This document shows, in pieces, positions 14,901-64,000 of a stretch of 64,000 nucleotides of DNA. The stretch covers positions 52,514,001 through 52,578,000 of the forward strand of contig NW_027266275.1 of NCBI RefSeq assembly GCF_022045235.1. Reading direction: 5' to 3'. A program made the translations under genes and the position numbers. How positions within the stretch are numbered: the first letter of the stretch is position 1; each line of letters begins with the position of its first letter. The notes below the pieces were generated by a model. That model did no database searches and had not been told where the DNA came from. It was given only the letters and a program-made list of their open reading frames with translations. Source of the stretch: Haliotis cracherodii (taxonomy: Eukaryota).

Positions 14901-15725
14901 ATGTCTCAATGCACCTGGGCTCTCGGGACGGTAACACTGATCCATGTCTCAATGCACCTGGGCTCTCGGGACGGTAACACTGATCCATGTCTCAATGCAC
15001 CTGGGCTCTTGGGACGGTAACACTGACCCATGTTTACATGCACCTTGGCTCTCGGGACGGTAACACTGACCTATGTGTACATGCATCTGGGCTCTCGGGA
15101 CGGTAACACTGATCCATGTCTCAATGCACCTGGGCTCTCGGGACGGTAACACTGATCCATGTCTCAATGCACCTGGGCTCTCGGGACGGTAACACTGACC
15201 CATGTTTACATGCACCTTGGCTCTCAGGACGGTAACACTGACCTATGTGTACATGCATCTGGGCTCTCGGGACGGTAACACTGACCCATGGTTCAATGCA
15301 CCTGGGCTCTCGGGACGGTAACACTGATCCATGTCTCAATGCACCTGGGCTCTTGGGACGGTAACACTGACCCATGTTTACATGCACCTTGGCTCTCGGG
15401 ACGGTAACACTGACCTATGTGTACATGCATCTGGGCTCTCGGGACGGTAACACTGATCCATGTCTCAATGCACCTGGGCTCTCGGGACGGTAACACTGAT
15501 CCATGTCTCAATGCACCTGGGCTCTCGGGACGGTAACACTGACCCATGTTTACATGCACCATGGCTCTCGGGACGGTAACACTGACCTATGTGTACATGC
15601 ATCTGGGCTCTCGGGACGGTAACACTGACCCATGGTTCAATGCACCTGGGCTCTCGGGACGGTAACACTGACCTATGTGTAATGCACCTGGGCTCTCAGG
15701 ACAGTAACACTGATCCATGTTTCAA
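11998..15725. repeat. 43-bp satellite, about 86 monomers, two subfamilies
   Basis: Type A CTCTAAACAGTGATACTGACCCATGTCTCACTGTGCCGGGTGT (to about 12660); type B CTCTCGGGACGGTAACACTGATCCATGTCTCAATGCACCTGGG. Confidence 0.97.
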
Positions 15726-15730
15726 TCTTA

Positions 15731-16730
15731 CATGATGATATGTGCTTGGGAGGCGTAATATCATTTGATGACTCATTACATCAAAGCTGTAGATATCTTG
15801 TGTTCCTGCGTGAAAGCTGTACCTGTTCATTTTTTTGGAGAAAAATAATGTATTTATCAATTACATCCGGAGTATTAGATCTGACATGTGCGTACTCAAA
15901 TGTCTAGGTTTCTGTACCCGAATCTCTGGCCAGCGTGACAGAAAACTATAGTTCCAGTGCAAACCGAGAGGGGTTGACTTATCACCAAGTCCAGGGTGAG
16001 GAGCAAAGTCGGTAACATTTTTTTGTCGTGTAGCCATACCCGATGTCGCTAGTGATCTTGATGCAGTCAACAAGGATTTAACAGTGACATTGCAAACGCT
16101 GCCTTTTTCCGTGTTATGATGGGAACTCCCCATCGTTTGGCTGCACGCTGTACCATTACATTTTCACTGATCAGCAAAGCTTATGTGTTATGTTCTCAGT
16201 CTAGTTACATCATCTCGACTGCATGCTTAAATTTAATTATGCGGTTAATGCGGCTGCTAAAACAATACTCTCCGCTTCAAGCGAAAACATACCCCACCTA
16301 TTAATACCAAATAAAAATGGTCCCAAAAGATTTCAGTACTTTATTCAGAGTGCGCAAATAGGCGTCATCAGGTTTGGTCCAACCTAATTTTAGAATTCCC
16401 CTCTGTGGCAGACGAGCGAAATGGATGATGTTTTGATTAGATTTGATTACTTAAATTCGTCAGTTACAACTAGCCAATTTTGATAATAAAAACACTACTA
16501 TTAAATATGTTGTTCTCTTTGCATTTAAACTTAGCTTACCTTTCAGATATTCATGTTTGATGAAAAGGTGGTTTGAGCACACACTTTCAACGGACAAGTT
16601 AATTACTTTTTCGGAATGACATTTATATCATTCCACTTCTCATGCACTAGCATTTGAGTATCTTGCTGTGAACTGGAAATACCCTGGCTTCTCCTTCGAC
16701 ATGTTCAAGAGGTACATTGATGTAGTGGCT
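15731..16730 (-). pseudogene. Candidate decayed multi-exon gene, DBF4-like (motifs N, M, C)
   Basis: Minus-strand splice signals (AAAG|GTAAGC about 16540, AATAG|G about 16297, AACAG|G about 15822, CAT|GTAAGA about 15730); peptides EKVINLSVES..LKGGV, RAAKRWGVPII, GDKS..WPEI and RYLQL*CNES..KHISS in DBF4 order, interrupted by stops and frameshifts. Confidence 0.3.
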
Positions 16731-23774: not shown

Positions 23775-24164
23775 TTAAGATGCCCTTCGGAGACAGAATG
23801 AAATGTATTAATCCCCAGGGACCTGCGACGAAACTATTTGTGGATCCTATTATGTCAATTACAGGGCCTGGTCTTGTTTTGTGATTAGTGTTATCTGAAG
23901 TCCATCAGCAATGAGATGTGTTATAAGTAGATAACACTTGTACAATCAGGATATTAACATTTACATTACCCATTACCCATGTAGGTTTGCATTTCCTACC
24001 GAGACTTAGCTGAATGCATGTGTCTCAACTAGTCTTCGTATCCATTTCATACTATTTCCTCGATCAACAAGGTATTATTTTCTATTTTAACTATAAGATA
24101 AGTATCCCATTTTTACACTGGTTGCTCAGTTATAAAAATCATTTTCAGTTCGTATCTGTTTGTA

Positions 24165-45254: not shown

Positions 45255-46226
45255 TTATTGACACTCCCGACAACAGAACATGTGCATTGCCAGGAACATT
45301 TTAAGAAACGCCTTCTTGAAATCCTTGTTCATGAAGGAATATATTATGAAGTTCATGCCAGAGTTCAGTAATCCAAGAGATAGTGTTATGCTCGTAGTAG
45401 CGCTGCCCACCCCGTAGGTATTGCCAAGAATGTTTACCACTGCCGACGGTAACCAACACAAGACGAACGTCCCGTACACCATGATAAAAAGTCTGACGGA
45501 ATGGAATGTTGATTTGTAGCGTATTGTAGATCTCATCGGTGACCCCCGTGCTTGAATGCGTTGACGGTGTTGGATAGCTTCCCTTGTAATGAGGCCGTAC
45601 ATGATTGCGTTCAACACAAAGACGGTGGCTGTGAAGGGCATGATGAAGTACAGTTGAAATGGTTTGGACACCACGTGGAAGAAGCTACAATACCCAGGCC
45701 AGGTCGACGTCAGCAGAGTAGAAGTCCCCACTAATATGGACACACACCATGTACACAGGATGATGAAGCCAGTTTTCTTCGGACTGAGGTAGATGTGGTA
45801 ATGGAGAGGGTGCTTGATGTAGACGTACCTGTCCACGGATATAGCACAGATGCAGAGGAAAGACTCAGACAGAATTAAATACAGCGCCCCATATCGAAAT
45901 GCACAGTTGAACCACGACCTGTCTAACATGTCCTCCACTCTAGGGACAATAGAGGACACGTAGAAGGGGAATGCAAGTCCTGTAAGAAAGTCACTACATG
46001 CTAAAGACACGATGTACATGTTGGGCGTGGTGCGGAGTGCCTCTGTCCGATACACAGCTACTACAGTGAGGAGATTGCCAACACAGACTAAACATCCTAC
46101 TAGTGTGAACAGAGCCAAGGTGAATATCTCAGTGCCACTCAAACTCCTGCATGATGCTATTGCCATGGTCATCATATTGGTGGAGTTCACGGTAGACAGG
46201 TTGGCACCCAACGGAATATGTTCCAT
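45255..46226 (-). CDS. Intronless class A (rhodopsin-like) orphan GPCR, about 323 aa
   Basis: Seven hydrophobic segments; GN, LAxxD, C3.25, DRY, W4.50, P5.50, CWLP, NSxxNFIIY and helix 8 (DFKKAF); N-glycosylation sequons NLS and NST; first ATG at 46226 (the track starts at a TTG immediately after an in-frame TAA). Confidence 0.93.
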   Translation of the reverse strand: MEHIPLGANLSTVNSTNMMTMAIASCRSLSGTEIFTLALFTLVGCLVCVGNLLTVVAVYRTEALRTTPNMYIVSLACSDFLTGLAFPFYVSSIVPRVEDMLDRSWFNCAFRYGALYLILSESFLCICAISVDRYVYIKHPLHYHIYLSPKKTGFIILCTWCVSILVGTSTLLTSTWPGYCSFFHVVSKPFQLYFIMPFTATVFVLNAIMYGLITREAIQHRQRIQARGSPMRSTIRYKSTFHSVRLFIMVYGTFVLCWLPSAVVNILGNTYGVGSATTSITLSLGLLNSGMNFIIYSFMNKDFKKAFLKMFLAMHMFCCRECQ

Positions 46227-46794
46227 CGATTTTAAACACAATTATAATTTAAGTCATAGCCTGTTGTTAGAGTTCACCGTTTATATCCAAAGTCCAAACG
46301 TTATCACGCATGCTTTCGTCCAAGGCAAACTAACAGCTCCCATATGCATATCTCTCTGTGCGTATCCTTGGTGTAGACGAATTCTTCTGCAACTGGGATC
46401 CTGTCAAGTCGGACAAGTTTCGCCAGACCAATACTTCAAGCGACACGAATTTCAATACACCTCTCTATTGGTAGTTATTACTCTATCCTTCATATATCAC
46501 ACTGGCACGGTCAGCGAATGTGTTTTATCAGTAAATTGTCTCTCATCCACCTGCTCCTCGTCTTGTAATCCTGGTGCGTGTTCAAATAACCTTATCTATC
46601 ACTCTAATCCATCCATCTATAACAAACGCATTGCCAGTGTTATATTTTGGCGTTTATCACTGTTATATAAAATGTATACGTCAATCATTCTATTATTGGA
46701 AATAATAGCCTTTCACGTCTCTGACAACAGTATTTATGACATAAAACGTCCGGTAAAAGTAAACGCCACAGCACCTTATGGTGAAGTGGTGAGG

Positions 46795-50050: not shown

Positions 50051-50359
50051 GCTGACCATTTATAGACACTGTTTCTTTTATTGTGCTTTCCAAAGATAAC
50101 TACATTAACAACAACCAATTTGAACTTTACACCAATCCTCTCCTCCCATTGCTTACACTTCCTTCCTCTGCATATGACATTAAATGGCGGGGGGAAATTG
50201 ATGCACTGCAGCAATCTCTACTTGTATTATTTAGCATAGATATATGTCCGTGAATAAACTTGCCTCAGTCCCAATTCTTTCCACGCGTATTTATCAATTG
50301 ATAAATGTACGTTAATACAGTAGCTGTGTGAAGTGGGCTGTTTGTTGAAATACGCATTT

Positions 50360-53300
50360 TTAGGGCTCCAAGCCTGAAAGGCTGTAGAGCCCTATTGTAA
50401 TCGGTGTGTTTATTATTATTATTATTATTAGGGCTCCAAGCCTGAAAGGCTGTAGAGCCCTATTGTAATCGTTGTGTTTATTATTATTATTAGGGCTCCC
50501 TGCCGACTAGGCAAGAGCCTTATTGTAATTGTTCGATTTATTTAGGGCTCCCTGCCTACAAGGCAAGAGCCCTATTGTAATTGTTCGATTTATTTATTAT
50601 TATTATTCCGACGATTTTTGTTCCAATCGTAACTCCAAAACTACTATTCAGAATATCTTCAAAATTTCCACAAAGATACCTTAGATCCTGAATTTATATC
50701 CACAAAAATCTCAAGACTCTTAGACTCAAGATCTGAGGGCAGATAACTCAAAACAACTTTAAAAATCGCAATTTCAACAGCTAAAATCTCCGCCACGAAA
50801 GCTCCAAAGACTTCCAAAATTCTTGAACAGGTGCGGAATCAGATGCCGAACAAAATCTCTACACATCCAATGTAGCGAAATTGCTTCGTTTGGCCTCCAT
50901 ATTGGATTAAGTGTTTTGGCACTGTTTTTTACCAAATTTCTCAGTACTTGACTCCCAAAATCACCTCAGCTGAAACTACCAGCTCAAAAGCTTCCAAACT
51001 CTCCATACCTTGTCTCCAAGTACCATACTACCAACTTCGCAGAAAGCGTCATGCGTTTTCCTGATACCTGATGTCCTGGCGATTCCAGAACACCAAACCG
51101 TTTGTCTGTAGCTCAACGGACAACGGAGCTACAGCGTTTTAAAGAGGGAACTCTTTGATAACCTTGCCATATAGCAAAACTCCAAACAGGCGTAACTCCC
51201 AAACTACCTGTCCGATTTCGGCCACATTTCGTGTGTGTATGTAGAATGGGGATGTCTGTTAACACGCCCAATTGTAGCGACACAGGAAATAAGACGACGG
51301 AGAGAGAAATGATGCATAATTTATGTATAACAACATCTTTCAACATATTGCGCCTAACCAGATCATTCAATAACTGGCAGGCTAGGCAATCTTTAGTATT
51401 TACATGTGCAATTCGATATTGAAATGCAGTCACAAATCACAAATCCTACTACATCAAACTACATCTTATCTCACGTGTTTTGAAAATGTCATTTTGTGGG
51501 GGTGACAAAGGGGCTTTATGACACTTCAAATATTTTTTTTAAAGTAAAAGACACTGAAAGAAGCAGCAGTAAAATTACAAATAAGTCCCGTTCACTGCAC
51601 TTCAATCGCCAGCAATACTGTGTCCTCTTTGCGCTATACGCTACATTATTGTCGCTAGACCAGTGGTATCGGTTTATTTATATAACCAACTACAGTCTGC
51701 AGTACGTGAGCTTTGTGTATAGTTTTCGGCTGTGGACTACAGAAATCAGTTGCCAGGGTCAATGAGATACAGTGTTTATACAGCTGATGGACAACGCAAG
51801 CAGAAACGGACTATAGAAATAGATTTACGTTTGCGCTCGTATGTTCAACGGTTCTGCATAGAAAACCGTGTAGCTTGGAGTAAATAACGACATCGTATGT
51901 TTTGTTATGTGAAAGCTCATATCTGCATCAATTGGCGCGAATTCACAATACACATTATCAACAGAGTTAAGCAAAGAACTGCGCATACATGTTTGTTGGC
52001 CTCACAGCGTGTCAGCGTACCTAAGTCAAAAGAAAACAGTGCAGCTTGGTATAATATATCGATATCGTAGTTTTTATTTTGTGGAAGCTCAAATCTGCAT
52101 TGGCGCGAATTCACGATACACGTTGTCAATAGAGTTAAGCAAACAAAGAATGGCGCATGCGTGCTTATTGGCCGCACAGCGTGTCTGAGTCCCAAGCGGC
52201 TTACCTCGTTCTTAAATGCTGTTCAGACTGTGGGATTTACGGTAGGTTTGTGATTGAAAGTTTGATATCGCTGAACTCTCCGATTAATGTACTATCTTTT
52301 AAACGTACTTGTCATAATTTTCTTACCGCAACCACAAGTAATAACAGACTGGTTCACTTCATGTTTCGACGGTAGTGATTTCTATAGTCTGTTTCTGTAT
52401 AGATTTTCTTTGCGCCATATGTTGTACTCTCTGCCAGCGGGAAGCACGCAGTTTCGCGCACATGCACGTATGGACGATACATCCCGATGTGTGTAAAACG
52501 CATAACAGAACCAGACACCTTGTACGACATGATGTATGGAGAGCATTAATGTTTTCAGATGGATCTATATCAACATCGTATTTTTTGTTCGTTAGTGGTG
52601 CACGTGGAAGCTCATATCTGCATTGGCGCGAATTCACAATACACACTGTCAATAGAGTTAAGCAAACAAAGAATTGCGGAATGCATGTCTATTGACTGCA
52701 CAGTGTATCAGCTTGGCTGAGGATGGATGAATTGAGTGCATATTGGAGTGTGAGCCAAGGTTGCGAAGAGCGAGACGCGCTAATTAAGCTCCCGGTAGAT
52801 TGTGTTAAAGGCACAAACACTTATTCTTTCAGCCGGCACTGGTAATAGGTAAAATAGAAGATAGGAGAGCAGTATAATACTCGGGTACAGGTGTTGATAC
52901 TGTTATAGTGGCGGGTAATGAAGGCTCCAGTTGCCAACGGGAAGAATAGAGTTACCACCCTTGATAATGCCAAACTGGACCTGTGCCAAAATGGACTGTT
53001 TTTCTCAGTCAAAACGGACAAGTTACATGTCACATAGTTAATAAAGGCTATATTATAATGATACACAGTAATGCAGATATCCTTCCTGATACCGGTAGTG
53101 AATTATGAATGACCATGACCTTGAATCATTGGTATCAAAGTAACATCATTTGGTTTCTTGGAACGGATTTCCGCACTATCAAATTACCTTTTTATAATGC
53201 GAACCTGTTCATTATTGAAAATTCCATTTTTTCTGAGACATCCCTGATATAATGCCAACTTTAAGAAGTATTATTTACCCATATCATTATGGTTTAGAAA

Positions 53301-55070
53301 CCAGTCCCTTTCTCAACCTACTTAAGTGCATTGATCTCCATTGTGTTTACAGCTAATCTTCTTTTAAACTTTGATCACAAACGCTTGGAAGACTTGGGGT
53401 TTTCTTTGCTGATTGGTTGAATTGCTTCAACAAGAATATGACAAGAGGTGACCCATGTGTTGTTACTGTTAGATAATGCCCCATGCCATCTCTTCCCTTA
53501 GCACGGGTCAAATTACAAGATCCATTTCCTGCTTATTACAATAACAAGTCACCAATACCCCTTCATGCTGGTATCATCCATCCTAAACAGGTCCAGAATC
53601 AAAATGGACACTTTTTTTCTTGGTCAAAACGGACCGGTGAAATATCCTATTGATAATCCAGCTCATCTTATACACAGTATAGCACATATCCTTCCGCATA
53701 TCGGAATGCTCTTATATAGAACATGTCTTAATGGTAATAGATTAGGGTCATTAACAACTCAGTTTCAATCGTTTTTAGAAATCTGTATAACCAAAGTGTA
53801 ATTTTGCAAAAGTACTTCTATGAATGGAGAGCAGGATCCGCTGCTACAAAATTACGATCGGGAGCCCGCCATCGCTGCTCGCAGCTATATTTATTATTAT
53901 TATTATTCCGCCGTTTTTTGTACCAGACCTACAAAAACAACCAGTAGCCAGAATGGCTTCAACATCGACAGCAACATCGGCACTAACGTGACGCAGTAAC
54001 CAGCAAAAAACCAAGGCCATAGGCCCAATGGCTAAGGGCAGATAACTCATCAAAGTTTCAACTTCAGCAGCAATAATCTTCGAAACTAATTGCAATCATA
54101 TGCCCATCATTTTGTACTGCAGGACCATGGTAGCTACAACGCACCGTTTGGCAGCCATATTGGATTTAAAGGTTTTGGCACTTCTTTTCACCATTTTTCT
54201 CAAAAGCTTCCAAACTTTCTATACTTTGTGTCCAAGTACCATACTAACAACTTCCGAGAAAACATACTTAGGTCAAAAGTCATGCGTTTTCCTGATACCT
54301 CATGTCCTGGCGATTCCAGAACACCAAACCGTTTGAATGTCGATAGACGGACAATGAAACTACATCGTTTTAAACATGGTACTCTTTGGCCCGTCCATAA
54401 ACTTGCCATATAGCACAACTCTAAACACTAATATTTCGACTAATACTGGGCCGATTTCGCCCAAATTTCGTGTGTATGTATACTGGGCCTGTTCATAGTC
54501 ATGCCTAATTGTAGCCACGTCGCATTGAAGGATAGGAAGAGAAAAATGTGAACAGAATTCATCTATAACAACAAATTTTAACCTATTGTACCTCACCATA
54601 TCATCCAATAAATGTCAGACTAGTCACGCTTTAGTATTTAAATATGCAGTTCGACATTGAAATGCTTTCACAAAATTCCACGTTTACATACAGCAAACTG
54701 TGATCCGACTGTGAAAATGTCATTCTATGGGGAAAACAGTCAGATTTTACGACACTTCAGTAAATAGACTGAAAGTAGCGTCCTTGCTCTTGACGCTGTA
54801 TCCGGTAAACCTGTGGTATATGTTTGTGGATTTCATAAACAAGTTCGTGGACTTTCTGTGTAATTTTGAGCGAACTGCGGTTGTGTTTATCCGTAATGGA
54901 CTACATAGATTACTTGTCAGTCTCAGTGAAATAGAGTGTACATTATGCGGGTAAACAACGCAAGCAGAAACGGACTATAGAAATATATTTTTAGAAGCAG
55001 TGAAAGAAGCTGCAGCAAAATTTCACTATAAGTCCCGTTCACACAATTTCAATCAACTAAGAATACTAAA
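50360..55070 (+). mobile_element. Outer Helentron-like element interrupted by the inner copy; 3' end not found
   Basis: Two AGGGCTCCAAGCC..GAGCCCT 5' ends at 50362 and 50430; (ATT)n resumes at 53892, followed by a body homologous to the inner one (51048-51106 vs 54279-54335). Confidence 0.65.
50491..53891 (+). mobile_element. Non-autonomous Helentron/DINE-1-like element (inner copy, complete)
   Basis: 5' AGGGCTCCC..GAGCCCT inverted repeat plus (ATT)n; 3' sub-TIR GGGAGCCC (53860-53867), hairpin GCTGC-TC-GCAGC and TATATT; T-rich junctions; no TSD seen. Confidence 0.75.
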
Positions 55071-55581
55071 GAACGTCCTCGGAAGGGCCTTCTCCAATCA
55101 ACCAATAAACTACCAAAACCAAACCACATAATCTAACTAACAAACATCCATTCTCAGCTCCCTTCATTTAACGGTACTGGCGTAAGCTTATCCATACACA
55201 CACACACTCACACACACACACCCCACCCCCACCCCCACCCCATCCCCCTCACCGGTTTAACCTCCTTCCGGCCAAGTGACCATACCAAAGATTGTCAATT
55301 ATCTACGATTCCTCTCCAGTGGCACGCCCGAGATTTACGGAATTTACCGAATGAACTCATATTTAGGAATCATAAAGTAGATATCCTTTTAAAAGATTGC
55401 ATATTAACGATTATCTATAAAAAAGTTTCAAAACTAATTCTATTACGATTTTCAATGTATTTTTAAGGGAGAAATAAATACTCTGGAAATAAATTTTTGT
55501 TCCGCCAATTCATATCACGTGACCAGACCTCCCCTGCTAGCGAAGAAGACATCGCCAAAGTCAGTTAGAAACATTGATACC

Positions 55582-58500
55582 ATGGCGTCGAGTTCTAAAA
55601 AGATAAAAAGAGACGACACGACAGATGAGTCAAGAACAGGTTACGTGGTGAACGTATCACCCATCAAACTAGGAGGTAAGTATGGCACTCCTTACTTTAA
55701 CCTGAAGTTACAGACGGGGGAACATTCAACAAGAGATGTGGTAATTTACTCGGGCAGTACTGACAAGCGTAACGAGTTTGATGCAAGAAGTAAAACGAAA
55801 GAAGGCATTGAGCTACTTGGAGTCACTGACATTCCCAGTAAGTGTTAACCTTTTATTTTATTAAATATTTTCACTTTTCAAAAGGGGCACTGATCTAACG
55901 CAATTCCCCGGGACTGGTTGTTGTCTTTGTTATTGTCTTTTTCCAGTGAGTACCCGGATGTATAGCAAAAATCTAGACTAGTTCGCGACCTCTGCTGCGC
56001 CATTCGTAAACGCATTAGTCACTTTTATGGGTAGTAATAAGGGCGTATGGTCACATTTATCAACAAAATGAAATACAGTTTTCGTGATAATAAGGAAATG
56101 TAGGTATCTTTGTGGGTAGCCTCGGTAATGGTGACGAAGTTTTGATAAGTCACTTGCCTGGTAATTTTGCGATTTTCGTTTACACTATTTTGACTTGCAA
56201 CACAAAGTAAATATTTCACCTGAGCATTGCTTTTTTTATAGTGTGTATATTATTTTTACTGTCAAATGTGTAACAAATTCATTAAACGTCTAAATATTCA
56301 GTTATTTTACAAAGTGACTGAAAAAACATTTCCATCTGTATTATTATGATAACGAATTCCAAACATCATGAACATTTTGATGTTTAATGTCATCACCAAG
56401 AGACTGAAAATGTTAGGTTGAAAAGTACATTTCTATATTGTTTGATTTCTAATCCTACATAATAATCTGTTGTGATGTTTGCAGGCCCTTTTGATCGTCT
56501 TAATCAATCTGGACAGATTTTTGTCAAAATGACGGAAATATTTACACATTTTATAAATTGCCAGAGAGAATCACATTTTACAAATTGACGGTAATATATA
56601 CACGCTTACAAAGGAAAAGACCAGAATTCGAAAACAATCAGTGTATATGCTTCTTAAAGAACATTCAACGGTTGACTCATTACATACAGAATTGCACATT
56701 TACTAGTGGTTACTTTACAAACAGCTGCCAGGGGGGATATGTCATCTTTCTGATAAATCTTGTTTTAATTACAATAACTCAAACCTTCTTGCTCATGATG
56801 CCTTCTAAACCATGCTAATCTTTATTGAAATTCCATTTTAGGCAGAAACCATCCATCACAGTGGGATTTGAGTGGAAATCAGCACACAAAAATCATCCCA
56901 AGAAAGCTTGATTTTAACCTTCATCAGTAGACATCGCGAAAGAAATCAAGACTTCAGAAATTAAAGATATTGAAGAAATTCAAACACAAGCCATCGTAAG
57001 TATATCAACTGCCTTACAGTTACACCAAAAGATCTATCATCTTTTCTAAATTAAATGGGATTATACTAAAGTTATATTGATATCTTCTCATCCCATTATT
57101 GCTAGATCTTTTGAAAAAAAACATACTTTCATAACTTGTATTTGTCAGCCTGACCTGTGACCAAGATTCGTAATTAAGTAATATGTACCTATTGTAATAT
57201 TACCAAAAACACAAATACTTTTGGATAAAATTATTGTGTTTTTCATAGAACTCACTTTGAGTTGAATGATATACAAAATAATAATTTCAAAGTTGTAATC
57301 CATAAAAATGTGGTCATACTGTTTACATATGCTGGTAGCGAAATAGTAATTGCATCTGGTAGATATTTTAAAATTTTGCACATGATGCATCGTCAAAGAC
57401 TGCAAGACTAGTAGGCAACTTTAAATCTGTAAAGTCAGAAGTAAGTAAATAACGTCAGTCTGTTTATGTCAAACATTTATTACACAAGAACTCTTGTCAC
57501 TGTCCTACAATCTGGATCAAGAACCACTGTGTTTGAAAAGAAATGTCTTTTACACACATTTCCTTAATTGAATACTCACAATATTGCCTTTATTCACATA
57601 AATGTCTTGAGCTTTGTCTGTTATATTTCATTTAAACATGTGTTTTTCAGGAACATATGAAAATACATTGATAAACAATCCAATTGCTTAACCTAAAACA
57701 GGTCTTCATACATCTTACAGTCCATATTTAAGTAAAGTAGAATGTAACAAATGAATTGTATACATGCCAACTTAGATGTCTAAATAGGATACATATGATT
57801 GAAGTTTATATTGATCAATTCATTAGAAATATAAGTTTAGTTATTTTACTGCATGGTTCCCCTGAAATCAAAGAAGGAATTTGATCTGCATCGTTATTGT
57901 ATGTGAAGTAAACACATATCTTTCATAAAAAAACAGAAGTTCTCTGCAAATACCATCTCCCAGTAGGCGTATAGTAGGGTAAAGTTAACTTAATGCTGCC
58001 CACCCTGGATAGAAACCTTTGTATTTAACATTTGATTATACATTTTACCTATCAACAGAAACTGAATGAAAATACTGTGGACAGACACCATAGAACAGTT
58101 TTGACTGCTCAATGATATCCGAGTATATTGTCTTTTCTTAATCTACTTTAAAATATTTTCAGGTAAACGTCACAGCAAAAGTGATTGAGACTGTTGAAGA
58201 AATTCAAGAAGTGCTTGTGGGGAACAGGAAAACACCTGTGAAAACTGTAAAAGTTGGAGATCAAAGTGGAGCTATAAACCTCAAGCTCTGGGGTGCCAAT
58301 ATCGACAGAATTGTATTGGGGATTCACCTCCCTTGGCGTCCGGGAATACATGGGTAGAAAATACCTAACAACAACGACGCCGTCATCGTCCTGGTTGGTT
58401 GTTGACGACATTCCAAACGTCAACGAGGAAGATGTTGGAATCAAGGAGAATGTCGTAGTGAGAGGAGAGGTCACTTTAGTGACCGTCACCCTATCCAAAG

Positions 58501-58822
58501 CCTGTCTCTCGTGCCGCAAAACGGTAACTGCCACGGACACAGGCAGTCAATTCGTAAAGTGCCCGGAATGTAAAATGAAGATGAAAAAAGACAAAATGAT
58601 CGACAACATGTTATGTAAACTATCTGTGGACGGTAACTCCTCCAAGTATTTGGTTTCTTCAGCAGTCCTGACAGAGTTTCTGTGCAGCACACAGAAGAGG
58701 ACATTCAAGGAAATGCAGATGAAATTGAAAACCATCTGCTCACATGCGGTGAAATAAAGATGGAGATCCCTCAAAATACGAGTCGTGCTGTTTCAACATG
58801 TTCAATGAAACTCGTGGACTAA
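55582..58822 (+). pseudogene. Three-exon RPA-like OB-fold ssDNA-binding protein with C4 zinc ribbon; three frameshifts
   Basis: Kozak ACCATGG; exons 55582-55837, 56842-56995 and 58163-58822 with GTAAGT/AG introns; VNVTAKV..VGDQSGAINLKLWG OB motif; CLSC..CPEC; AATAAA at about 59172. Confidence 0.8.
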
Positions 58823-58849
58823 ATTAACACTTTGAACATAAGGAACCTG

Positions 58850-59135
58850 AGCAGTCACTGTCAATGTAGGGGGAGAGGATCCCCGTGTACAGGAGGGACA
58901 TCAGTGAGGTTCACCCTGGGTAGGTAGCAGTCACTGTCAATGTAGGGGGAGAGGTTCCCCGTGTACAGGAGGGACATCAGTGAAGTTCACCCTGGGTAAG
59001 TAGCAGTCACTGTCAATGTAGGGGGAGAGGATCCCCATGTACAGGAGGGACATAAGTGAGGTTCACCCTGGGTAGGTAGCAGTCACTGTCAATGTAGGGG
59101 GAGTGGTTCCCCATGTACAGGAGGGACATCAGTGA
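58850..59135. repeat. 76-bp tandem repeat, about 3.7 copies
   Basis: AGCAGTCACTGTCAATGTAGGGGGAGAGG(A/T)TCCCC..CCTGGGTAGGT at 58850, 58926, 59002 and 59078. Confidence 0.95.
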
Positions 59136-61106
59136 CATTTTGTCATGCATTTATCCTTCCATGTTCATCAAAATAAAGTTTTTGTTTGTGATATTAAAAA
59201 TATGTCTTTGTTCTTTATCGCTGCACTCAACAATGTTCCTGCTACATGACAGCAGTTTCTAAATAATGGAATTTCGAACACAGAATCCAGTGATTGGCAT
59301 CATTAGCATTGACATGCATGAACAAAGTCAGACATCAAGTATCACCACCCCCTTACTCAGTGCTCTCCAAAAACAATCATAGTGTCAGTTGTAATATAAT
59401 TATGAAAGATCCATGAGTCGATAGGAAATTTATTAGGGAGTATAACCATATAATGCTTTTTCAGTCACAAGTCAATGAAAAACATTTGTTAATCTCGACA
59501 AATATAAACAGGAGGGGTCTGCATACAATTAATGAAGGTGGTGTTCTCGACCGTAATGTGGGGTCATGTCTTGACTCTTGCACACTATCGCGGCTCTCGG
59601 GCAATGAACACTTTGAATTGCAAGTGCATATTATTCCAAACACTAATCGATTAAGCCGGCAATTAGGTGGGTACAGTCCATGAGTGAGTTTGCTATTAGC
59701 GGAATTGCTTATATATAAATCTGAGTTACGTCCCTTAGCCGCTAATATTCCAAGCTCCTTTCCAGCGCGTGACACCTTCGTTACACAGTATAGAGAGCTC
59801 CGGGAACGTACTATCGCTGTGAGGAGCTTGCTATTATTCACCAAACTCCACCACAGAGTTTGTCTCATATTAATATGCATTTCAAGAGCTCCGCCAGGAA
59901 GATGTTGCTGTAAGGAGTATCAGCATTTCTGACGTGTAGGGCCCTATTCCACAAAGCGACCTATTAGTGCTAAGTTGGTCTTAACTCCCATGCTTTACCA
60001 TAGGCTTACGATCAACGTAGCACTAACATAGCTTTGTAAGGATTAGAATAGTGTTGTTGGCTGAAATTTGTACCTGTTTAGCCAAGTAGTTGCATGTATA
60101 TTATGCGTACTGTTCTGTCCCGTCACCTATTTTCGAGGTATTTCCATGATTAAGGGTGCGATCTGTTCTTGTGTGAAACACGGATTTTGGGTCTTAAATA
60201 CCGGTTTTATCTCCTCTGAAACTGGGGAAGCATTGGTCCGATACTGACCACATTTTACGCTTGTATTCAGACGATCAGTGCCGGTTCTAACTGTGAGGAC
60301 TACGGGAGATTCATATTATTGAAACTGACGGCTATAAATGAAGTACCACATATAACTGTATGATCTTTAAAGATAACCTGATGAAAGTTTAAGGATCAAT
60401 GTAGTTTTATATTCTGATCTATTACCAGAGGAAATCTAATGTTTCTGCATATTTCAAGCAAAATGATACATTACTGAAATGTTATTGAATAGGTTCTGAA
60501 GTAAGACTCATAACAGAAAAAGATACCCACTATACCCCAAACAAATAATAAACAGATTATCTATGTGCATGTAGTCCTATGTCCATATGTGTACTTTAGT
60601 AACTGACGCCCCGTGATTCGCTGCATCACTTTTGGCTTACCTCCCACATTAAGCTGGCATGCAATCTTATAACTGGAATACTGTTAAAAGCTGCGTACGC
60701 GGGTATACTCACTCACTACACCATGTATACTGTATTGGTGTTTTATGACAACATGATCCAAATACATACTCAAGCAATCATAATTTCAAACAAATTAACA
60801 CTGTTAATGTTGTGAATTTCTTTTATTGCACATCTTGTGTTTCTTAGTTTATCAACATATAAAAATTTGGCGCAGGAAATGCTACACTTTCAGAACATCA
60901 TATACAACCATCAATATACCTCATACATTATAAATGTTCTTTAATTTCACAATTTCAGCAATAGCTCAAGTATATGAATGTATGAAAATACTCAAATATG
61001 AACAAGCAAACACAGTGACCTTTATGAAATAACAATTGTATTGTCTTCTGAAAACATTATAGGAAATAAGAAAAATATCAAAACATTGAACATATCAATG
61101 TTTCAT

Positions 61107-61640
61107 GGGTTACAGCTAAAACGGCGCTTCAGCAAAACGGCACTGATTGGTGAAAACGGCACCTCGCCGCAAGCGAAAACGTCTACAACTGCCTGTCAAA
61201 AACTGCACCCTATTTATTTTTACCTTGGTAAAATAAATGAAATTAGACTTACATGGTCACTTGCAAACACCAATAATTGTGAAATGTTAAAACTAGTTAC
61301 CATTTGAAATTAGCCTCTACTCCAACTATATTCGAACTTAGCCTATACGTAACTCAATTTATTGTTAAAACCTAACATGCCTTTAAGTTAAATAAATGAA
61401 ATTAAACTCACATTGTCTCTTATAAAGACTAACAGTAGTGAAATCTTAAAACAAGTTTACAGTACAAATTAGCCCCCTATTCCAAATTACTCGCTGACTC
61501 TGATTGGGAGGTGCAACTAACTTATTGTGAAAATATTATATCCTTTGAAGTAAAATAAATGAAATTAAACCCACATTGTCTCTTACAAACACCAATAATT
61601 GTGAAAAGTTGAAACATGTTTACATTCGAAATAAGCCCCC
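61107..61640. mobile_element. MITE-like end with AAAACGGCAC repeats followed by an approximately 160-bp internal tandem repeat
   Basis: GGGTTACAGCTAAAACGGC..; AAATAAATGAAATTA at about 61231, 61390 and 61553. Confidence 0.45.
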
Positions 61641-62019
61641 TGAGTCAGCTACTATCACAATGCTCATTGGTACATGGGCCGATATTGTAAAGTGGGATGA
61701 AGATGAAAACTGTGGAGAACTGTATACATGTGAATGTATGTAGTTATGTGTGAACAACTGGAAAACAGGAAATAATATGTAAATACATCAAATAATATGT
61801 AACAAGTAACATAAATCAGATATACTACCACATATATCGTTATTAGCAATAGAGGAACTGTTTTCGCCTCCACCCATGTATCTAATAAGAAAGATGAAAA
61901 AAGTTCATTGCCCAAGCATCACTATATGAACACATTTGTACAATTAACATACTATAAACAGATATACAGAAGATATACAAATCCCATTCCTTTGGAAATA
62001 AATATTTTGAGTCTGGCTG

Positions 62020-62840
62020 GAAATGGATCTATTCTTGAACCTCTGTTAGGTATTTTGTAATAATTTCTTAAGGTGTTACTCCATGTTTGAATCTAGCTAA
62101 AGTATGTAGATCCGTATTAGAATCAACAATTTGGTAGATTGTGGGGAATTCCTTGATTCTTACCCCAGGTTAGAATGTAAGTAAAGTAAGTATTTATTAG
62201 AATCAATTTGTGTTGATTTTAGAGATTTTTGCTGCAGGTTCGACCCAAGCTTCAGGATATACATATATATTAGAATCAACTCTAGAATATTTTGCGGTGA
62301 TTTCACAGATGCTTACTGCAGGTTCGAACCTAGCCATAGGGTGTAGATCCATACAAGAATCTGCCTTTGGCTGTAAAATTATTTTCTTAAGATCTTTCAG
62401 ATTATACCCTGAGGTTCAAAGACACTGTAGCTCATGGCAAGAATAAGGTGTATTGTGCCCTTAGAACCGAAGTATGAAGAAAGTAAAATATCAACACACT
62501 GAACATGTATTATGTAGGCATGACCATGATGACAAGTTGAACCTATTGTGACCAAAACAACACCATATGAATACATCTCTACAGTGATAGACAGAAGACA
62601 TATCAGCCTTTTCACAATGCTTGATATCAGTAATAGAATAAAATGGTGTATGTGATGCCTGAGGTTCAAACCTGCCTTGAGGCTTTAGATCAATACTACA
62701 AAGTACCCTTCCATTTTTTGAGGTCATTTCCCCATATCTTACCCAGAGGTTCAAACCCAACTACAGGCTTTAGATCAATTATAGATTATGTCCTTGGGTA
62801 TATTCTGAAGATATCGTAAGTTGTTACCCCAGGTTTGAGT
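62020..62840. repeat. Old degenerate tandem repeat, period about 80 bp
   Basis: Recurring ATTAGAATCAA and (C/G)AGGTTC(G/A)AAC motifs at 74-83 bp spacing. Confidence 0.55.
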
Positions 62841-64000
62841 GTATTCTTCGTGTCTGAAGGAATTGCAAGGATGTCCCTGAAGTCTGAACTGTTATACCAG
62901 AGCAGGCAGTCAGAACATCAGTACATAAACAGAAATCACTGAGGCCTATCAGTTGCAGGTTTGTTTGATGTTTAGGGTGTTCACATTCACATCTCTGTCC
63001 AAACAATTTGGAGACGAACTCAATAGTCCACATTCAGAAATCACTTTTAAAGTAGAGCGATGACACCAGTACACACAATCTTATCTTGTTCTACATATAG
63101 CACCAGCATTCACCGAAGGAAAAGGTCACACCACTCTGTCAAGTCAATTGTGATTGTTTTGTTGCTATTGATATCATATGATGTCACTTGGCTGTATCAG
63201 AATGATAATAGTTCTTGTTGATAGAACATATCCTTGATAATAGATGACAAGGTACTTGTAGTCCTTATGTGACTCTTGATCTGTCAAGCTCTCACAGAGT
63301 CTGGAGGACTAGTCAAATGGGGCCTCTTCAACTGTCTTGTGTCTGTATTTGAGAAATGTTTTCAAATACATCGTAACCCATTCTGTGTGGTTATGCCTTA
63401 TTTGTTCTTGTTGTTCATTACAGAAAAGTTGTCAACAAACAAGCTATTAATTTCACAGTTCACTGAACTTGTTGAAGCAGAACCAATCACAGTAAGTTAT
63501 CATTAATCAGATATCAATACATGTGATAAAATCTTCAAATGCACGTTTGTATAATAATACAACATGCATTCATGCCATGATCAACCTCTTCAGAACTTCA
63601 TTGTATGCTTGTATGAAAGGTGTACTGAATTTTGTATGAACATCATACAGCAATGACAAATAACTATTATCAGCATTACACAGGTAGAATCAATAATACA
63701 CACATCTTTCATGTAACACATGATAAACAATTCAGGAATCAGGGTTACCATGTTTACTACCTCACATAATGTGTACTGTATAATTCATAAATCAATTGAT
63801 TTGCATTTATGATTATAAACATTATGGCCAAACATAATTAATTTCTGAAAAACTTCACCAAAGCAATAGAAAATACATTTCTGCACAACAGATACATGAG
63901 TACCCAATGTATGTTACAGTATCCATTGATAAGTGATTACTTGATTGCAGTAATATTTAGTGTGTAAACTTCGGTGGTACCAAAACCACATGCCTATTTG

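What the first reader, a model, noticed from the sequence alone, without database searches (positions are those of the whole stretch)
55582..59180. Spliced RPA-like OB-fold/Zn-ribbon gene sitting in a Helentron-like element
Seen: three exons with canonical GT-AG introns, a strong Kozak context and a polyA signal. They give MASSSKKIKRDD (basic, NLS-like), then an OB-like segment GYVVNVSPIK..YFNLKLQT, then VNVTAKV..VGDQSGAINLKLWG, then CLSC-x15-CPEC and ADEIENHLL. Reconstruction needs frameshifts at about 56917, 58320 and 58697. Established: RPA70-type OB folds bind ssDNA, the C-terminal OB carries a C4 zinc ribbon, and some Helitron/Helentron families encode RPA-like proteins. Inference: this is a compact (about 355 aa) element-borne ssDNA-binding accessory gene for rolling-circle transposition rather than host RPA1. 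It starts about 0.5 kb after the outer Helentron body, whose 3' end is not in the window. Whether this family is already described cannot be determined here.
Basis: partly seen in the sequence, partly recalled or inferred. Interest (0 to 1): 0.75.

Follow-up and report, generated by a model that had tools for sequence, protein, structure and literature searches.

The report
Dead RPA-like gene inside a Helentron
This is a broken copy of a small single-strand-DNA-binding gene, a miniature of replication protein A, carried by a rolling-circle transposon in an abalone genome; such genes are already known, but its exons have an oddly older history than the DNA around them.

Summary
Three GT-AG exons (55582-55837, 56842-56995, 58163-58822) encode an RPA70-like protein. 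Contigs from two independent DNA studies carry the same indels, so they are real.

An intact 356-aa paralogue lies on contig C34. Its exon 3 folds (pLDDT 94.9) into two OB folds, the second with a C4 zinc ribbon. The best matches are archaeal RPA and human RPA70 DBD-B/C. A full-length relative aligns over 318 residues with RPA70 DBD-A/B/C.

The gene sits in a repeat of at least 19 kb, present on three chromosomes. Convergent with it, just beyond the window, that repeat carries a Helentron polyprotein: two proteases, DUF6570, Rep, PIF1 and an AP endonuclease. Host RPA1 is elsewhere.

RPA/Ssb-like genes in Helentrons are in print, so this is a new member of a known kind, and the window copy is dead.

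One thing is unexplained. Divergence between copies is 9.7% in this gene's exons and UTRs, against 2-3% in introns, spacers and RepHel (dS 0.36 against 0.037). The change is sharp at the splice sites.

The parts
55582..55837 (+). Exon 1 (ATG in ACCATGG; 85 codons plus 1 base): basic N-terminus and the first strands of OB fold 1
   Evidence: It is 92% identical to the C34 copy at protein level. It is 40% identical to the N-terminus of the scallop family member P0008, E 6e-14. It matches profile positions 1-84.
55838..56841 (+). Intron 1 (GT..AG). It holds a very high-copy interspersed repeat at about 55881-56720.
   Evidence: Depth in contigs and reads is 1e4-1e5 here, against about 10-100 beside it.
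56842..56995 (+). Exon 2 (end of OB fold 1 and the linker). One base is missing at about 56916, which shifts the frame into a TAG.
   Evidence: The C34 exon 2 is open for 51 codons. X1 and X5 contigs match 56831-57025 exactly.
56996..58162 (+). Intron 2 (GT..AG), low copy
   Evidence: It is 97-98% identical to C34.
58163..58822 (+). Exon 3 coding part: OB fold 2, and OB fold 3 with the C4 zinc ribbon (CLSC..CPEC) and C-terminal helices. It is broken by an 11-bp deletion (58322/58323) and a 1-bp deletion (about 58698).
   Evidence: AF2 model of the intact C34 exon 3 has pLDDT 94.9.
58823..59180 (+). 3' UTR with a 76-bp tandem repeat x3.8 (58850-59135) and AATAAA at 59172-59177
59181..64000 (-). 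Non-coding spacer of the same repeat unit. It runs on beyond the window to the stop of the Helentron RepHel-endonuclease gene (C12:52579395, minus strand).
   Evidence: It is colinear with C34 and C6 at 91-98%.
50356..54428 (.). Helentron end-type repeats: GC-rich hairpin plus (ATT)n units, and copies of a 1.5-kb unit that forms tandem arrays next to other copies. This is the likely 3' part of the element that carries the gene.

Best explanation
The locus is a decayed copy of an accessory gene carried by an autonomous Helentron (HLE2 rolling-circle transposon) of an abalone genome. The closest public protein is named Haliotis cracherodii. The intact form (contig C34, 356 aa, three exons) is a miniature RPA70. 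It has a short basic, NLS-like N-terminus and three OB folds equivalent to DBD-A, DBD-B and DBD-C, the last with a C4 zinc ribbon. It has no DBD-F domain. By inference, the protein enters the nucleus and coats the single strand that the element's Rep nickase and PIF1 helicase peel off during rolling-circle transposition. This would protect that strand and keep it unfolded until it is re-inserted. The window copy cannot do this. Three frame-breaking deletions interrupt it, and its partner RepHel is also split into several frames. Shown here: the gene structure, the indels, the fold, the family, the linkage to RepHel, and purifying selection on the gene. Inferred: ssDNA binding and the role in transposition.
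For: Fold and family. A profile of 69 family members hits Sulfolobus SSB (E 1e-14) and archaeal RPA (2e-10 to 3e-9). With full-length members it also hits human RPA70 DBD-C, 1l1o_C, at E 1.4e-3. The AF2 model of C34 exon 3 has pLDDT 94.9. Foldseek's top hits are P. abyssi RPA at 6e-10 and human RPA70 at 1.4e-9. VIA gives 1o7i Z 14.1 (97 aligned, 2.4 A), and 9pd4_N Z 10.8 with 208 residues aligned to RPA70 317-598. The full-length relative P0008 (pLDDT 90.5) aligns over 318 residues with RPA70 194-597, Z 13.8. The four Cys are invariant or nearly invariant in 69 sequences. Among members, Pfam finds Ssb-like_OB in 16, REPA_OB_2 in 11 and Rep_fac-A_C in 2 of 69.

Linkage. The unit of at least 19 kb that holds the gene is colinear at 88-99% on C12, C34 and C6. 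It carries Herpes_teg_N, OTU, DUF6570, Helitron_like_N, PIF1 and Exo_endo_phos, as one 2684-aa ORF on C34.

Selection. Exon 3 dN/dS is 0.11-0.17.

Host RPA1 is elsewhere, on C27.

Literature. Helentrons are reported to encode RPA-like ORFs, including a 358-aa one in a mite (PMC4067079, section 7 read). RPA and Ssb-like_OB domains are reported as recurrent in HLE2 (PMC11417382, passages).
Against: There is no RNA evidence. No listed holder is on record as RNA, and no spliced joint was seen. Pfam finds nothing above threshold in the abalone protein itself. Only 3 of 23 near-full RepHel places in this genome carry the gene. Two RPA-less elements examined (C9, C78) have none by profile search. So the gene is dispensable in cis, and its use in transposition is unproven. 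The element's termini and T-T insertion sites were not defined. C34 and C6 share about 10.6 kb more upstream than C12, so part of the copy history could be segmental duplication. Solo diverged copies on C45 and C4 have no RepHel within 20 kb.
Confidence: 0.8

Rival explanations
1. Passenger gene. A host or foreign OB-fold gene was captured by one Helentron subfamily, as Helitron-type elements often do, and is carried along without any part in transposition.
For: The gene is present with only 3 of 23 near-full RepHel places, and absent from the C9 and C78 elements. The spliced gene structure looks like a cellular gene. HELIANO's authors suggest such domains are not essential and may come from ancient captures (PMC11417382, passage).
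Against: dN/dS is 0.11-0.17 over a dS of up to 0.36, so the protein has long been kept working. The same about 360-aa architecture recurs in 579 representative clusters across molluscs, fish, a hemichordate and a nemertean. RPA/SSB-type genes recur in Helentrons of unrelated hosts.
Confidence: 0.13
2. Host gene that merely lies beside Helentron insertions, for example a domesticated ssDNA- or telomere-binding factor. On this reading the three copies come from segmental duplication.
For: C34 and C6 share about 10.6 kb more than C12 beyond RepHel. Solo copies on C45 and C4 have no RepHel nearby. Public annotation calls it an ordinary uncharacterised protein.
Against: Three copies lie on three chromosomes, always in the same order and orientation relative to RepHel and to the hairpin/1.5-kb repeats. 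Two of the three are decayed, which is unlike a needed host gene. The 1.5-kb end repeats also follow RepHel in the RPA-less C9 element, which places the gene between RepHel and the element's end part.
Confidence: 0.05
3. The frameshifts are assembly errors and the window copy is in fact intact.
For: One of the three breaks lies in a short T run.
Against: Contigs of DNA runs from two studies reproduce all three sites with 0 differences and 0 gaps. One break is an 11-bp deletion.
Confidence: 0.02

Closest known systems
RPA-like ORFs of Helentrons (for example the 358-aa second ORF of Helentron-Mo-1A of a mite; Thomas et al. 2014, PMC4067079)
   Same: It is a separate gene beside a Rep-PIF1-AP-endonuclease polyprotein. 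It is about 356-358 aa and homologous to RPA70 DNA-binding domains. It is proposed to bind the single-stranded transposition intermediate.
   Different: The mite ORF is reported without introns and is recognised by CDD as DBD-A/B. The abalone gene has two introns and is invisible to Pfam on its own. It lies downstream of RepHel on the other strand.
Ssb-like_OB, RPA and HIN domains recurrently found in HLE2 elements by HELIANO (Li et al. 2024, PMC11417382)
   Same: 16 of 69 family members hit Ssb-like_OB and 11 hit REPA_OB_2. HIN-200 OB pairs are also among the structural matches. The partner element has the Exo_endo_phos, Herpes_teg_N and DUF6570 marks of HLE2 subgroup b.
   Different: The paper states that the RPA domain in HLE2 is enriched upstream of RepHel and limited to subgroup a. 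Here the gene is downstream and convergent, in an element with subgroup-b marks. I could not see the paper's figures or supplements, so I do not know where it places Ssb-like_OB.
Eukaryotic RPA70 (RPA1), DBD-A/B/C
   Same: Three tandem OB folds, with a C4 zinc ribbon inside the third. A family member aligns over 318 residues with human RPA70 194-597 (Z 13.8). The family profile hits DBD-C 1l1o_C.
   Different: It has no N-terminal DBD-F or long linker, is about 356 aa rather than about 600, and shares 12-16% identity. The host's own RPA1 is at C27. Whether it pairs with RPA32/14-like partners is unknown.
Crenarchaeal SSB, human SSB1 (SOSS-B1) and archaeal RPA
   Same: These are the best single-domain matches of OB fold 2: 1o7i Z 14.1, 4oww_B Z 13.2, profile E 1e-14. 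P. abyssi RPA is the best two-domain match.
   Different: Those proteins have one OB fold with a flexible tail, or a different domain count. None is transposon-borne.

Membership tests
RPA70-like ssDNA-binding proteins | Tandem OB folds of the DBD-A/DBD-B type | tested here: met
   C34 exon 3 residues 1-98: Z 14.1 to 1o7i and Z 10.4-10.6 to RPA70 1jmc/1fgu. P0008 residues 21-243 align with RPA70 194-425, Z 14.0. Exon 1 is homologous to the first OB of P0008.
RPA70-like ssDNA-binding proteins | C-terminal OB fold (DBD-C) with an embedded C4 zinc ribbon | tested here: met
   C117, C120, C136 and C139 are invariant or nearly invariant in 69 sequences. The profile hits human RPA70 DBD-C 1l1o_C/9mj5_C at E 1.3-1.4e-3, covering chain residues 42-143. 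Two-domain alignments to RPA70 317-598 and P. abyssi RPA are. The domain was not folded and searched alone.
RPA70-like ssDNA-binding proteins | N-terminal DBD-F domain and linker; Pfam gathering scores for REPA_OB_2 and Rep_fac-A_C | tested here: not met
   The protein starts about 20 residues before OB fold 1. The abalone exon pieces and C34 exon 3 match 0 Pfam families above cut-off. So it works like a trimmed RPA70 but is not a canonical RPA1. Host RPA1 is at C27.
RPA70-like ssDNA-binding proteins | Binds ssDNA; forms a trimer with RPA32/RPA14 | not testable with these tools
   No biochemical data. This is inference from the fold only.
Helentron (HLE2) autonomous element, as carrier of the gene | Rep (HUH) plus PIF1 helicase, with an AP endonuclease fused at the C-terminus | tested here: met
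   Helitron_like_N 1.5e-33, Pif1_2B and Exo_endo_phos 9e-13 in the window-side copy. On C34, one 2684-aa ORF has Helitron_like_N, PIF1 2e-26 and Exo_endo_phos 1.6e-12.
Helentron (HLE2) autonomous element, as carrier of the gene | Helentron-type Rep motif 2 with Ser between Gly and Pro (..QxRGSPHxH), as given by Thomas et al. 2014 | tested here: met
   VEFQHRGSPHTH is read in the Rep ORF translation. The criterion is read in PMC4067079 section 7.
Helentron (HLE2) autonomous element, as carrier of the gene | OTU-type protease and DUF6570 accessory domains | tested here: met
   OTU 2.9e-09, DUF6570 2e-16, Herpes_teg_N 8.5e-12.
Helentron (HLE2) autonomous element, as carrier of the gene | Insertion between T and T, subterminal inverted repeats, 3' palindrome | tested here: inconclusive
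   GC-rich hairpin plus (ATT)n units lie at 50356-50596, and the same unit is in each 1.5-kb repeat beside the C34 and C9 copies. Exact termini and empty sites were not determined. The 5' side of the window copy ends at C12:52587119, whereas C34 and C6 run on.

The most novel reading that the evidence does not exclude
The gene's mature-mRNA parts (5' UTR, three exons, and the 3' UTR up to the polyA signal) have been replaced at least twice, in different copies, by sequence from anciently diverged lineages of the same gene. Introns, spacers and RepHel kept a young common backbone. The simplest mechanism that gives tracts ending exactly at splice sites is conversion templated by a spliced transcript or its cDNA, or by an intron-less or differently-introned donor. 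Such a transcript may anneal to the element's single-stranded transposition intermediate. If so, a DNA transposon's accessory gene would be exchanging alleles through RNA.
Probability: 0.2. Interest if true: 0.75.

Novelty: new member of a known kind. Interest (0 to 1): 0.4.

Why it matters
The finding gives a clean, structure-backed annotation for a large family. The family has 579 representative clusters at E<=1e-3, all 10 looked-up examples are unnamed or 'uncharacterized/hypothetical', and they come from molluscs, fish, a hemichordate and a nemertean. These are compact RPA70-like proteins, most plausibly Helentron cargo. That helps to keep them out of host gene sets, and it points to a testable ssDNA-handling step in Helentron transposition. 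The window copy itself is a dead relic. The exon-restricted divergence, if it reflects transcript-templated conversion, would be an unusual route of allele exchange among transposon copies. It is directly testable with population long reads.

Tried and rejected
Pfam on the six exon pieces gave nothing usable. Five of 6 pieces had 0 families. The 154-aa piece had 11 sub-threshold hits, mostly zinc-ribbon/zinc-finger models, best E 0.0089.

The word-indexed protein search found only 3 close abalone proteins among 173 candidates. The exhaustive HMMER search was needed to reach the family.

RNA evidence was sought and not found. No listed holder of the stretch is on record as RNA. The one 'RNA?' run that was laid (X15, another species) carries intron sequence too, and no spliced joints appeared. 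The raw-read run X21 was sampled at about 1 in 100 and gave almost no depth outside the intron-1 repeat.

I looked for an RPA-like gene in two RPA-less Helentron subfamilies (C9, C78; 30 kb each) with a family HMM. There was none.

I considered editing, hypermutation or CpG decay as the cause of the exon-restricted divergence. I rejected these because transitions number 63 and transversions 82, with no A>G or C>T excess. In addition, 20 of 25 exon-1 coding differences are at third codon positions.

I considered positive selection and rejected it, since dN/dS is 0.15.

I considered assembly artefact and rejected it, because independent contigs span exon/intron borders exactly.

I did not define the element's termini. 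C34 and C6 share about 10.6 kb more than C12 upstream of RepHel, with no ORF of 150 aa or more except one 176-aa ORF whose translation looked to me like a retroelement remnant (not searched). Its meaning is open.

A paper search for cDNA-mediated conversion patterns gave only general gene-conversion papers, which I saw as listings only.

Supplements of PMC11417382 (Table S11, Figs S9-S14) and of PMC4067079 (Table S3) are closed. They may already list mollusc Helentrons with Ssb-like_OB/RPA genes and their positions.

The joined three-exon protein was never built, searched or folded. Exons were handled apart, and the natural database proteins P0001 and P0008 were used instead.


Full report
**1. 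What is at the coordinates**

The window is G000:C12:52514001-52578000 of a 1.18-Gb, 80-contig eukaryote assembly. On the + strand, an ATG in the context ACCATGG opens at 55582.

The gene parts are:
- Exon 1: 55582-55837, followed by GTAAGT.
- Exon 2: 56842-56995, after AG, again followed by GTAAGT.
- Exon 3: starts at 58163 after CAG, with a stop ending at 58822.
- AATAAA: 59172-59177.

To read the gene through, three frame changes are needed.

Alignment with two paralogous copies shows what these changes are:
- one base missing at about 56916;
- 11 bases missing between 58322 and 58323;
- one base missing at about 58698;
- two in-frame insertions of 3 and 9 bp.

Contigs of DNA runs from two different studies (X1, X5) lie on 56831-57025, 58228-58445 and 58416-58879 with 0 other letters and 0 gaps. 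The indels are therefore real, and the window copy is a pseudogene. One of the two runs may be from the assembled animal, but the two studies differ.

**2. Copies in the same genome**

tblastn with the 154-aa exon-3 ORF gave 6 matches from 18 scored candidates:
- the window itself;
- C6 at 84% identity, open frame 226 aa;
- C34 at 85% identity, open frame 226 aa;
- two broken copies on C45, at 65% and 44%;
- one on C4 at 32%.

Exon 1 is found only on C12 and C34, 2 matches of 4 candidates.

On C34 all three exons are open:
- exon 1: 85 codons plus a split codon;
- exon 2: 51 codons ending ..QAI;
- exon 3: 219 codons.

C6 has no exon 1. Its exon 2 has a stop and a frameshift. Its exon 3 is open.

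A public model of the C34 gene, P0001, is 236 aa and is named as an uncharacterised protein of Haliotis cracherodii. It sits on a contig of the same length as C34. It starts inside exon 2 and crosses the same exon 2/3 junction.

**3. What the protein is**

Pfam sees nothing in the abalone pieces.

An exhaustive HMMER search with the C34 exon 3 found 579 representative proteins at E<=1e-3 and 62 at E<=1e-10. Many are 340-370 aa long, with the match in their C-terminal two thirds.

Ten were looked up. Eight carry names and two (both from Logan) carry none. The named ones are unnamed-function proteins of Pecten maximus (three of the ten), Lottia gigantea, Ptychodera flava, Lineus longissimus, Labeo rohita and Carassius auratus.

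Exon 1 of the window is 40% identical to the N-terminus of the scallop member P0008, E 6e-14.

A family HMM hits the three exons at contiguous profile positions, 1-84, 85-139 and 135-353. This independently supports the exon model.

Profile searches against solved structures:
- A profile of 69 members hits Sulfolobus SSB at 1e-14, archaeal RPA domains at 2e-10 to 3e-9, and human SSB1 at 7e-5.
- A profile of 41 mostly full-length rows also hits Ustilago RPA70 at 1e-9.
- The zinc-ribbon domain of that profile hits human RPA70 DBD-C (1l1o_C, 9mj5_C) at 1.3-1.4e-3.

Pfam on the 69 members gives Ssb-like_OB in 16, REPA_OB_2 in 11, tRNA_anti-codon in 3 and Rep_fac-A_C in 2. The abalone sequence itself matches none.

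Structure of C34 exon 3:
- The AF2 model has pLDDT 94.9.
- Foldseek's best matches are Pyrococcus abyssi RPA (5.9e-10), human RPA70 in 9pd4 (1.4e-9), CTC1 and Ustilago RPA70.
- VIA-align gives Z 14.1 to 1o7i (97 residues, 2.4 A) for residues 1-98.
- Two-domain alignments are 201-208 residues long, to P. abyssi RPA and to RPA70 317-598, that is DBD-B plus DBD-C (Z 10.8-10.9).
- The rmsd of those two-domain fits is high, about 9.6-9.7 A. I take this to reflect domain orientation. The third OB fold was not folded and searched alone.

Structure of the full-length relative P0008:
- It folds with pLDDT 90.5 into three beta-barrels with OB topology.
- It aligns over 318 residues with human RPA70 194-597 (Z 13.8) and over 315 residues with Ustilago RPA70 190-606 (Z 13.4).

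The ESM Atlas gives the same picture. RPA70 clusters match at TM 0.60-0.63 over 324-338 residues, and the nearest clusters are large unnamed animal families.

The four cysteines are invariant or nearly invariant.

The host's canonical RPA1 (Rep_fac-A_C over the curated cut-off) is a different locus, on C27.

So the protein is a trimmed RPA70: DBD-A, DBD-B and DBD-C with its zinc ribbon, and no DBD-F.

**4. The carrier**

blastn shows that the window from about 54258 to its end, plus the next 9119 bases of C12, is colinear with C34 (reverse strand) and, from 56646 on, with C6. Identity is 88-99%.

Just beyond the window, on the minus strand, lie ORFs with these Pfam domains:
- Herpes_teg_N
- OTU
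- DUF6570
- Helitron_like_N (1.5e-33)
- Pif1_2B
- Exo_endo_phos

On C34 these form one 2684-aa ORF that also has PIF1 at 2e-26.

The Rep motif reads VEFQHRGSPHTH. This is the Helentron signature given by Thomas et al. 2014 (PMC4067079, section 7 read).

The RPA-like gene is therefore about 6.2 kb downstream of the RepHel stop, on the other strand, so the two are convergent.

What lies upstream (50356-54428) is GC-rich hairpin plus (ATT)n units, and copies of a 1.5-kb unit. That same unit forms a tandem array beside the C34 copy, and also follows RepHel in an RPA-less element on C9. This places the gene between RepHel and the element's end repeats.

I did not determine exact termini or T|T target sites. 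C34 and C6 share about 10.6 kb more than C12 upstream of RepHel, and I cannot explain this.

In the window-side copy RepHel is split into at least six ORFs, with an open frame of 748 aa around Rep, against 2691 aa on C34. The whole copy is decayed.

**5. How common the pairing is**

The 745-aa Rep ORF has 64 matches in the genome, from 83 candidates of which 60 were scored. Of these, 23 places cover nearly the whole query at 84-100% identity, and 17 of those 23 sit in open frames of 2600 aa or more.

Only the three copies of one subfamily carry the RPA-like gene. The C9 and C78 elements (30 kb each) have none by HMM.

The diverged copies on C45 and C4 have no RepHel within 20 kb. The C4 copy is a tandem array, of about 704-bp period, of an OB-fold fragment.

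The gene is thus not needed in cis by most copies. It could act in trans or be dispensable.

**6. Comparison with what is in print**

Helentrons are reported to carry RPA-like ORFs. The mite Helentron-Mo-1A has an intron-less 358-aa ORF with RPA1 DBD-A/B hits (PMC4067079; passages and section 7 read).

HELIANO (PMC11417382; passages read) reports the following:
- RPA, Ssb-like_OB and HIN are among domains stably included in HLE2.
- The RPA domain in HLE2 is enriched upstream of RepHel and limited to subgroup a.

The abalone gene differs in four ways. It has two introns. Pfam misses it. It is downstream and convergent. It sits in a subgroup-b-type element.

Tandem repeats carried by Helentron derivatives in an oyster are in print (PMC7492417; I saw only the search listing).

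I therefore class the finding as a new member of a known kind. The papers' supplements were closed and may already list such cases.

**7. An unexplained feature: divergence confined to the exons**

Substitutions between the C12 and C34 copies:

| Region | Differences | Rate |
|---|---|---|
| RPA-like gene exons plus UTRs | 145 of 1492 | 9.7% |
| Introns and spacers | 290 of 9082 | 3.2% |
| RepHel coding sequence | 151 of 7562 | 2.0% |

Fisher tests give p = 2e-25 and 6e-40.

The change is sharp at the gene's borders:
- Exon 2 has about 21 differences in 154 bp, while the 12 and 10 intron bases shown beside it have none.
- The 37 intron bases after the exon-1 donor have none.
- The rate falls back to 2% just past the polyA signal.

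Exon 3 has dS 0.36 and dN 0.056 between C12 and C34. The Rep ORF of the same two copies has dS 0.037.

The spectrum is unbiased, with 63 transitions and 82 transversions. In exon 1, 20 of 25 coding differences are at third codon positions.

So these are old, selectively filtered differences, not hypermutation.

Three-way site patterns disagree between parts:

| Part | Sites | C12 odd | C34 odd | C6 odd | All differ |
|---|---|---|---|---|---|
| Intron 2 | 1164 | 8 | 18 | 51 | 0 |
| Exon 3 | 648 | 60 | 9 | 5 | 0 |
| Exon 2 | 154 | 3 | 14 | 10 | 4 |

In exon 1, a contig of another species (run X15) sides with C12 at 26 of the 29 C12-C34 differences. The H. rufescens protein P0002 shares the C34-type end of exon 2.

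At least two exon-limited replacements in different copies are needed to explain this.

I can think of two causes. One is conversion templated by a spliced transcript or its cDNA. The other is conversion from donors whose introns are not homologous. No such donor is in this assembly, so this stays a hypothesis.

**8. Verdict**

ssDNA binding and a role in rolling-circle transposition are inferences from fold and context and were not shown here.

The joined three-exon protein was deliberately not built or searched.

Noticed in passing
window 55500-59180 compared with L013/L009 (C34) and L014 (C6): Substitutions between copies are confined to the gene's exons and UTRs: 9.7%, against 2-3% in introns, spacers and RepHel. 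Exon-3 dS is 0.36, against 0.037 for Rep. The breaks are sharp at splice sites and at the polyA signal, and exon and intron trees conflict.
   Followed up: yes
window 55881-56720 (intron 1): A very high-copy interspersed repeat. Read and contig depth is 1e4-1e5 here, against about 10-100 beside it, in four runs of two or more species. It is also present in the C34 copy, so it predates the copies. Its family was not identified.
   Followed up: partly
window 58850-59135: A 76-bp tandem repeat, 3.8 copies at 94% matches, in the 3' UTR. Each unit holds a short palindrome (GGGGAGAGGATCCCC). The blastn matches suggest fewer units on C34 and C6 (not counted).
   Followed up: partly
L012/L016 (G000:C4:33910000-33929999): A tandem array with a period of about 704 bp. 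Each unit encodes the same fragment of the RPA-like OB fold (profile positions 177-222). There is no RepHel within 20 kb. This is a gene fragment turned into a satellite.
   Followed up: partly
L013/L029 (G000:C34:37626136-37640999): At least 10 head-to-tail copies of a 1500-bp unit that are 100% identical to each other. Each contains the hairpin plus (ATT)n end motif also seen at window 50356-50596. Perfect identity may be real recent amplification or an assembly effect.
   Followed up: partly
L028/L019 (C34) and L020/L027 (C6): C34 and C6 share about 10.6 kb (95.8% identity) upstream of RepHel that the window-side copy lacks. It has no ORF of 150 aa or more except one 176-aa ORF whose translation looked to me like a retroelement remnant (not searched). 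This could be an element part, a nested insertion or a segmental duplication.
   Followed up: partly
G000, 23 places listed: Seventeen of 23 near-full Helentron RepHel places sit in open frames of 2600-3200 aa, so this Helentron group looks recently active in this genome.
   Followed up: no
window 45255-46241 (-): A 328-aa intron-less ORF that looks like a seven-helix (GPCR-type) receptor, presumably a host gene.
   Followed up: no
window 33844-34908 (-): Two adjacent ORFs (174 and 163 aa) whose translations look like the two halves of a mariner-type transposase, judged by eye and not searched.
   Followed up: no
window 24000-32000: About 8 kb with strong negative GC skew (-0.26 to -0.33) and AT skew. 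It is full of periodic repeat ORFs on both strands, a long tandem repeat array.
   Followed up: no
window 12001-16000: A 4-kb block with G+C 0.52, against about 0.40 around it.
   Followed up: no
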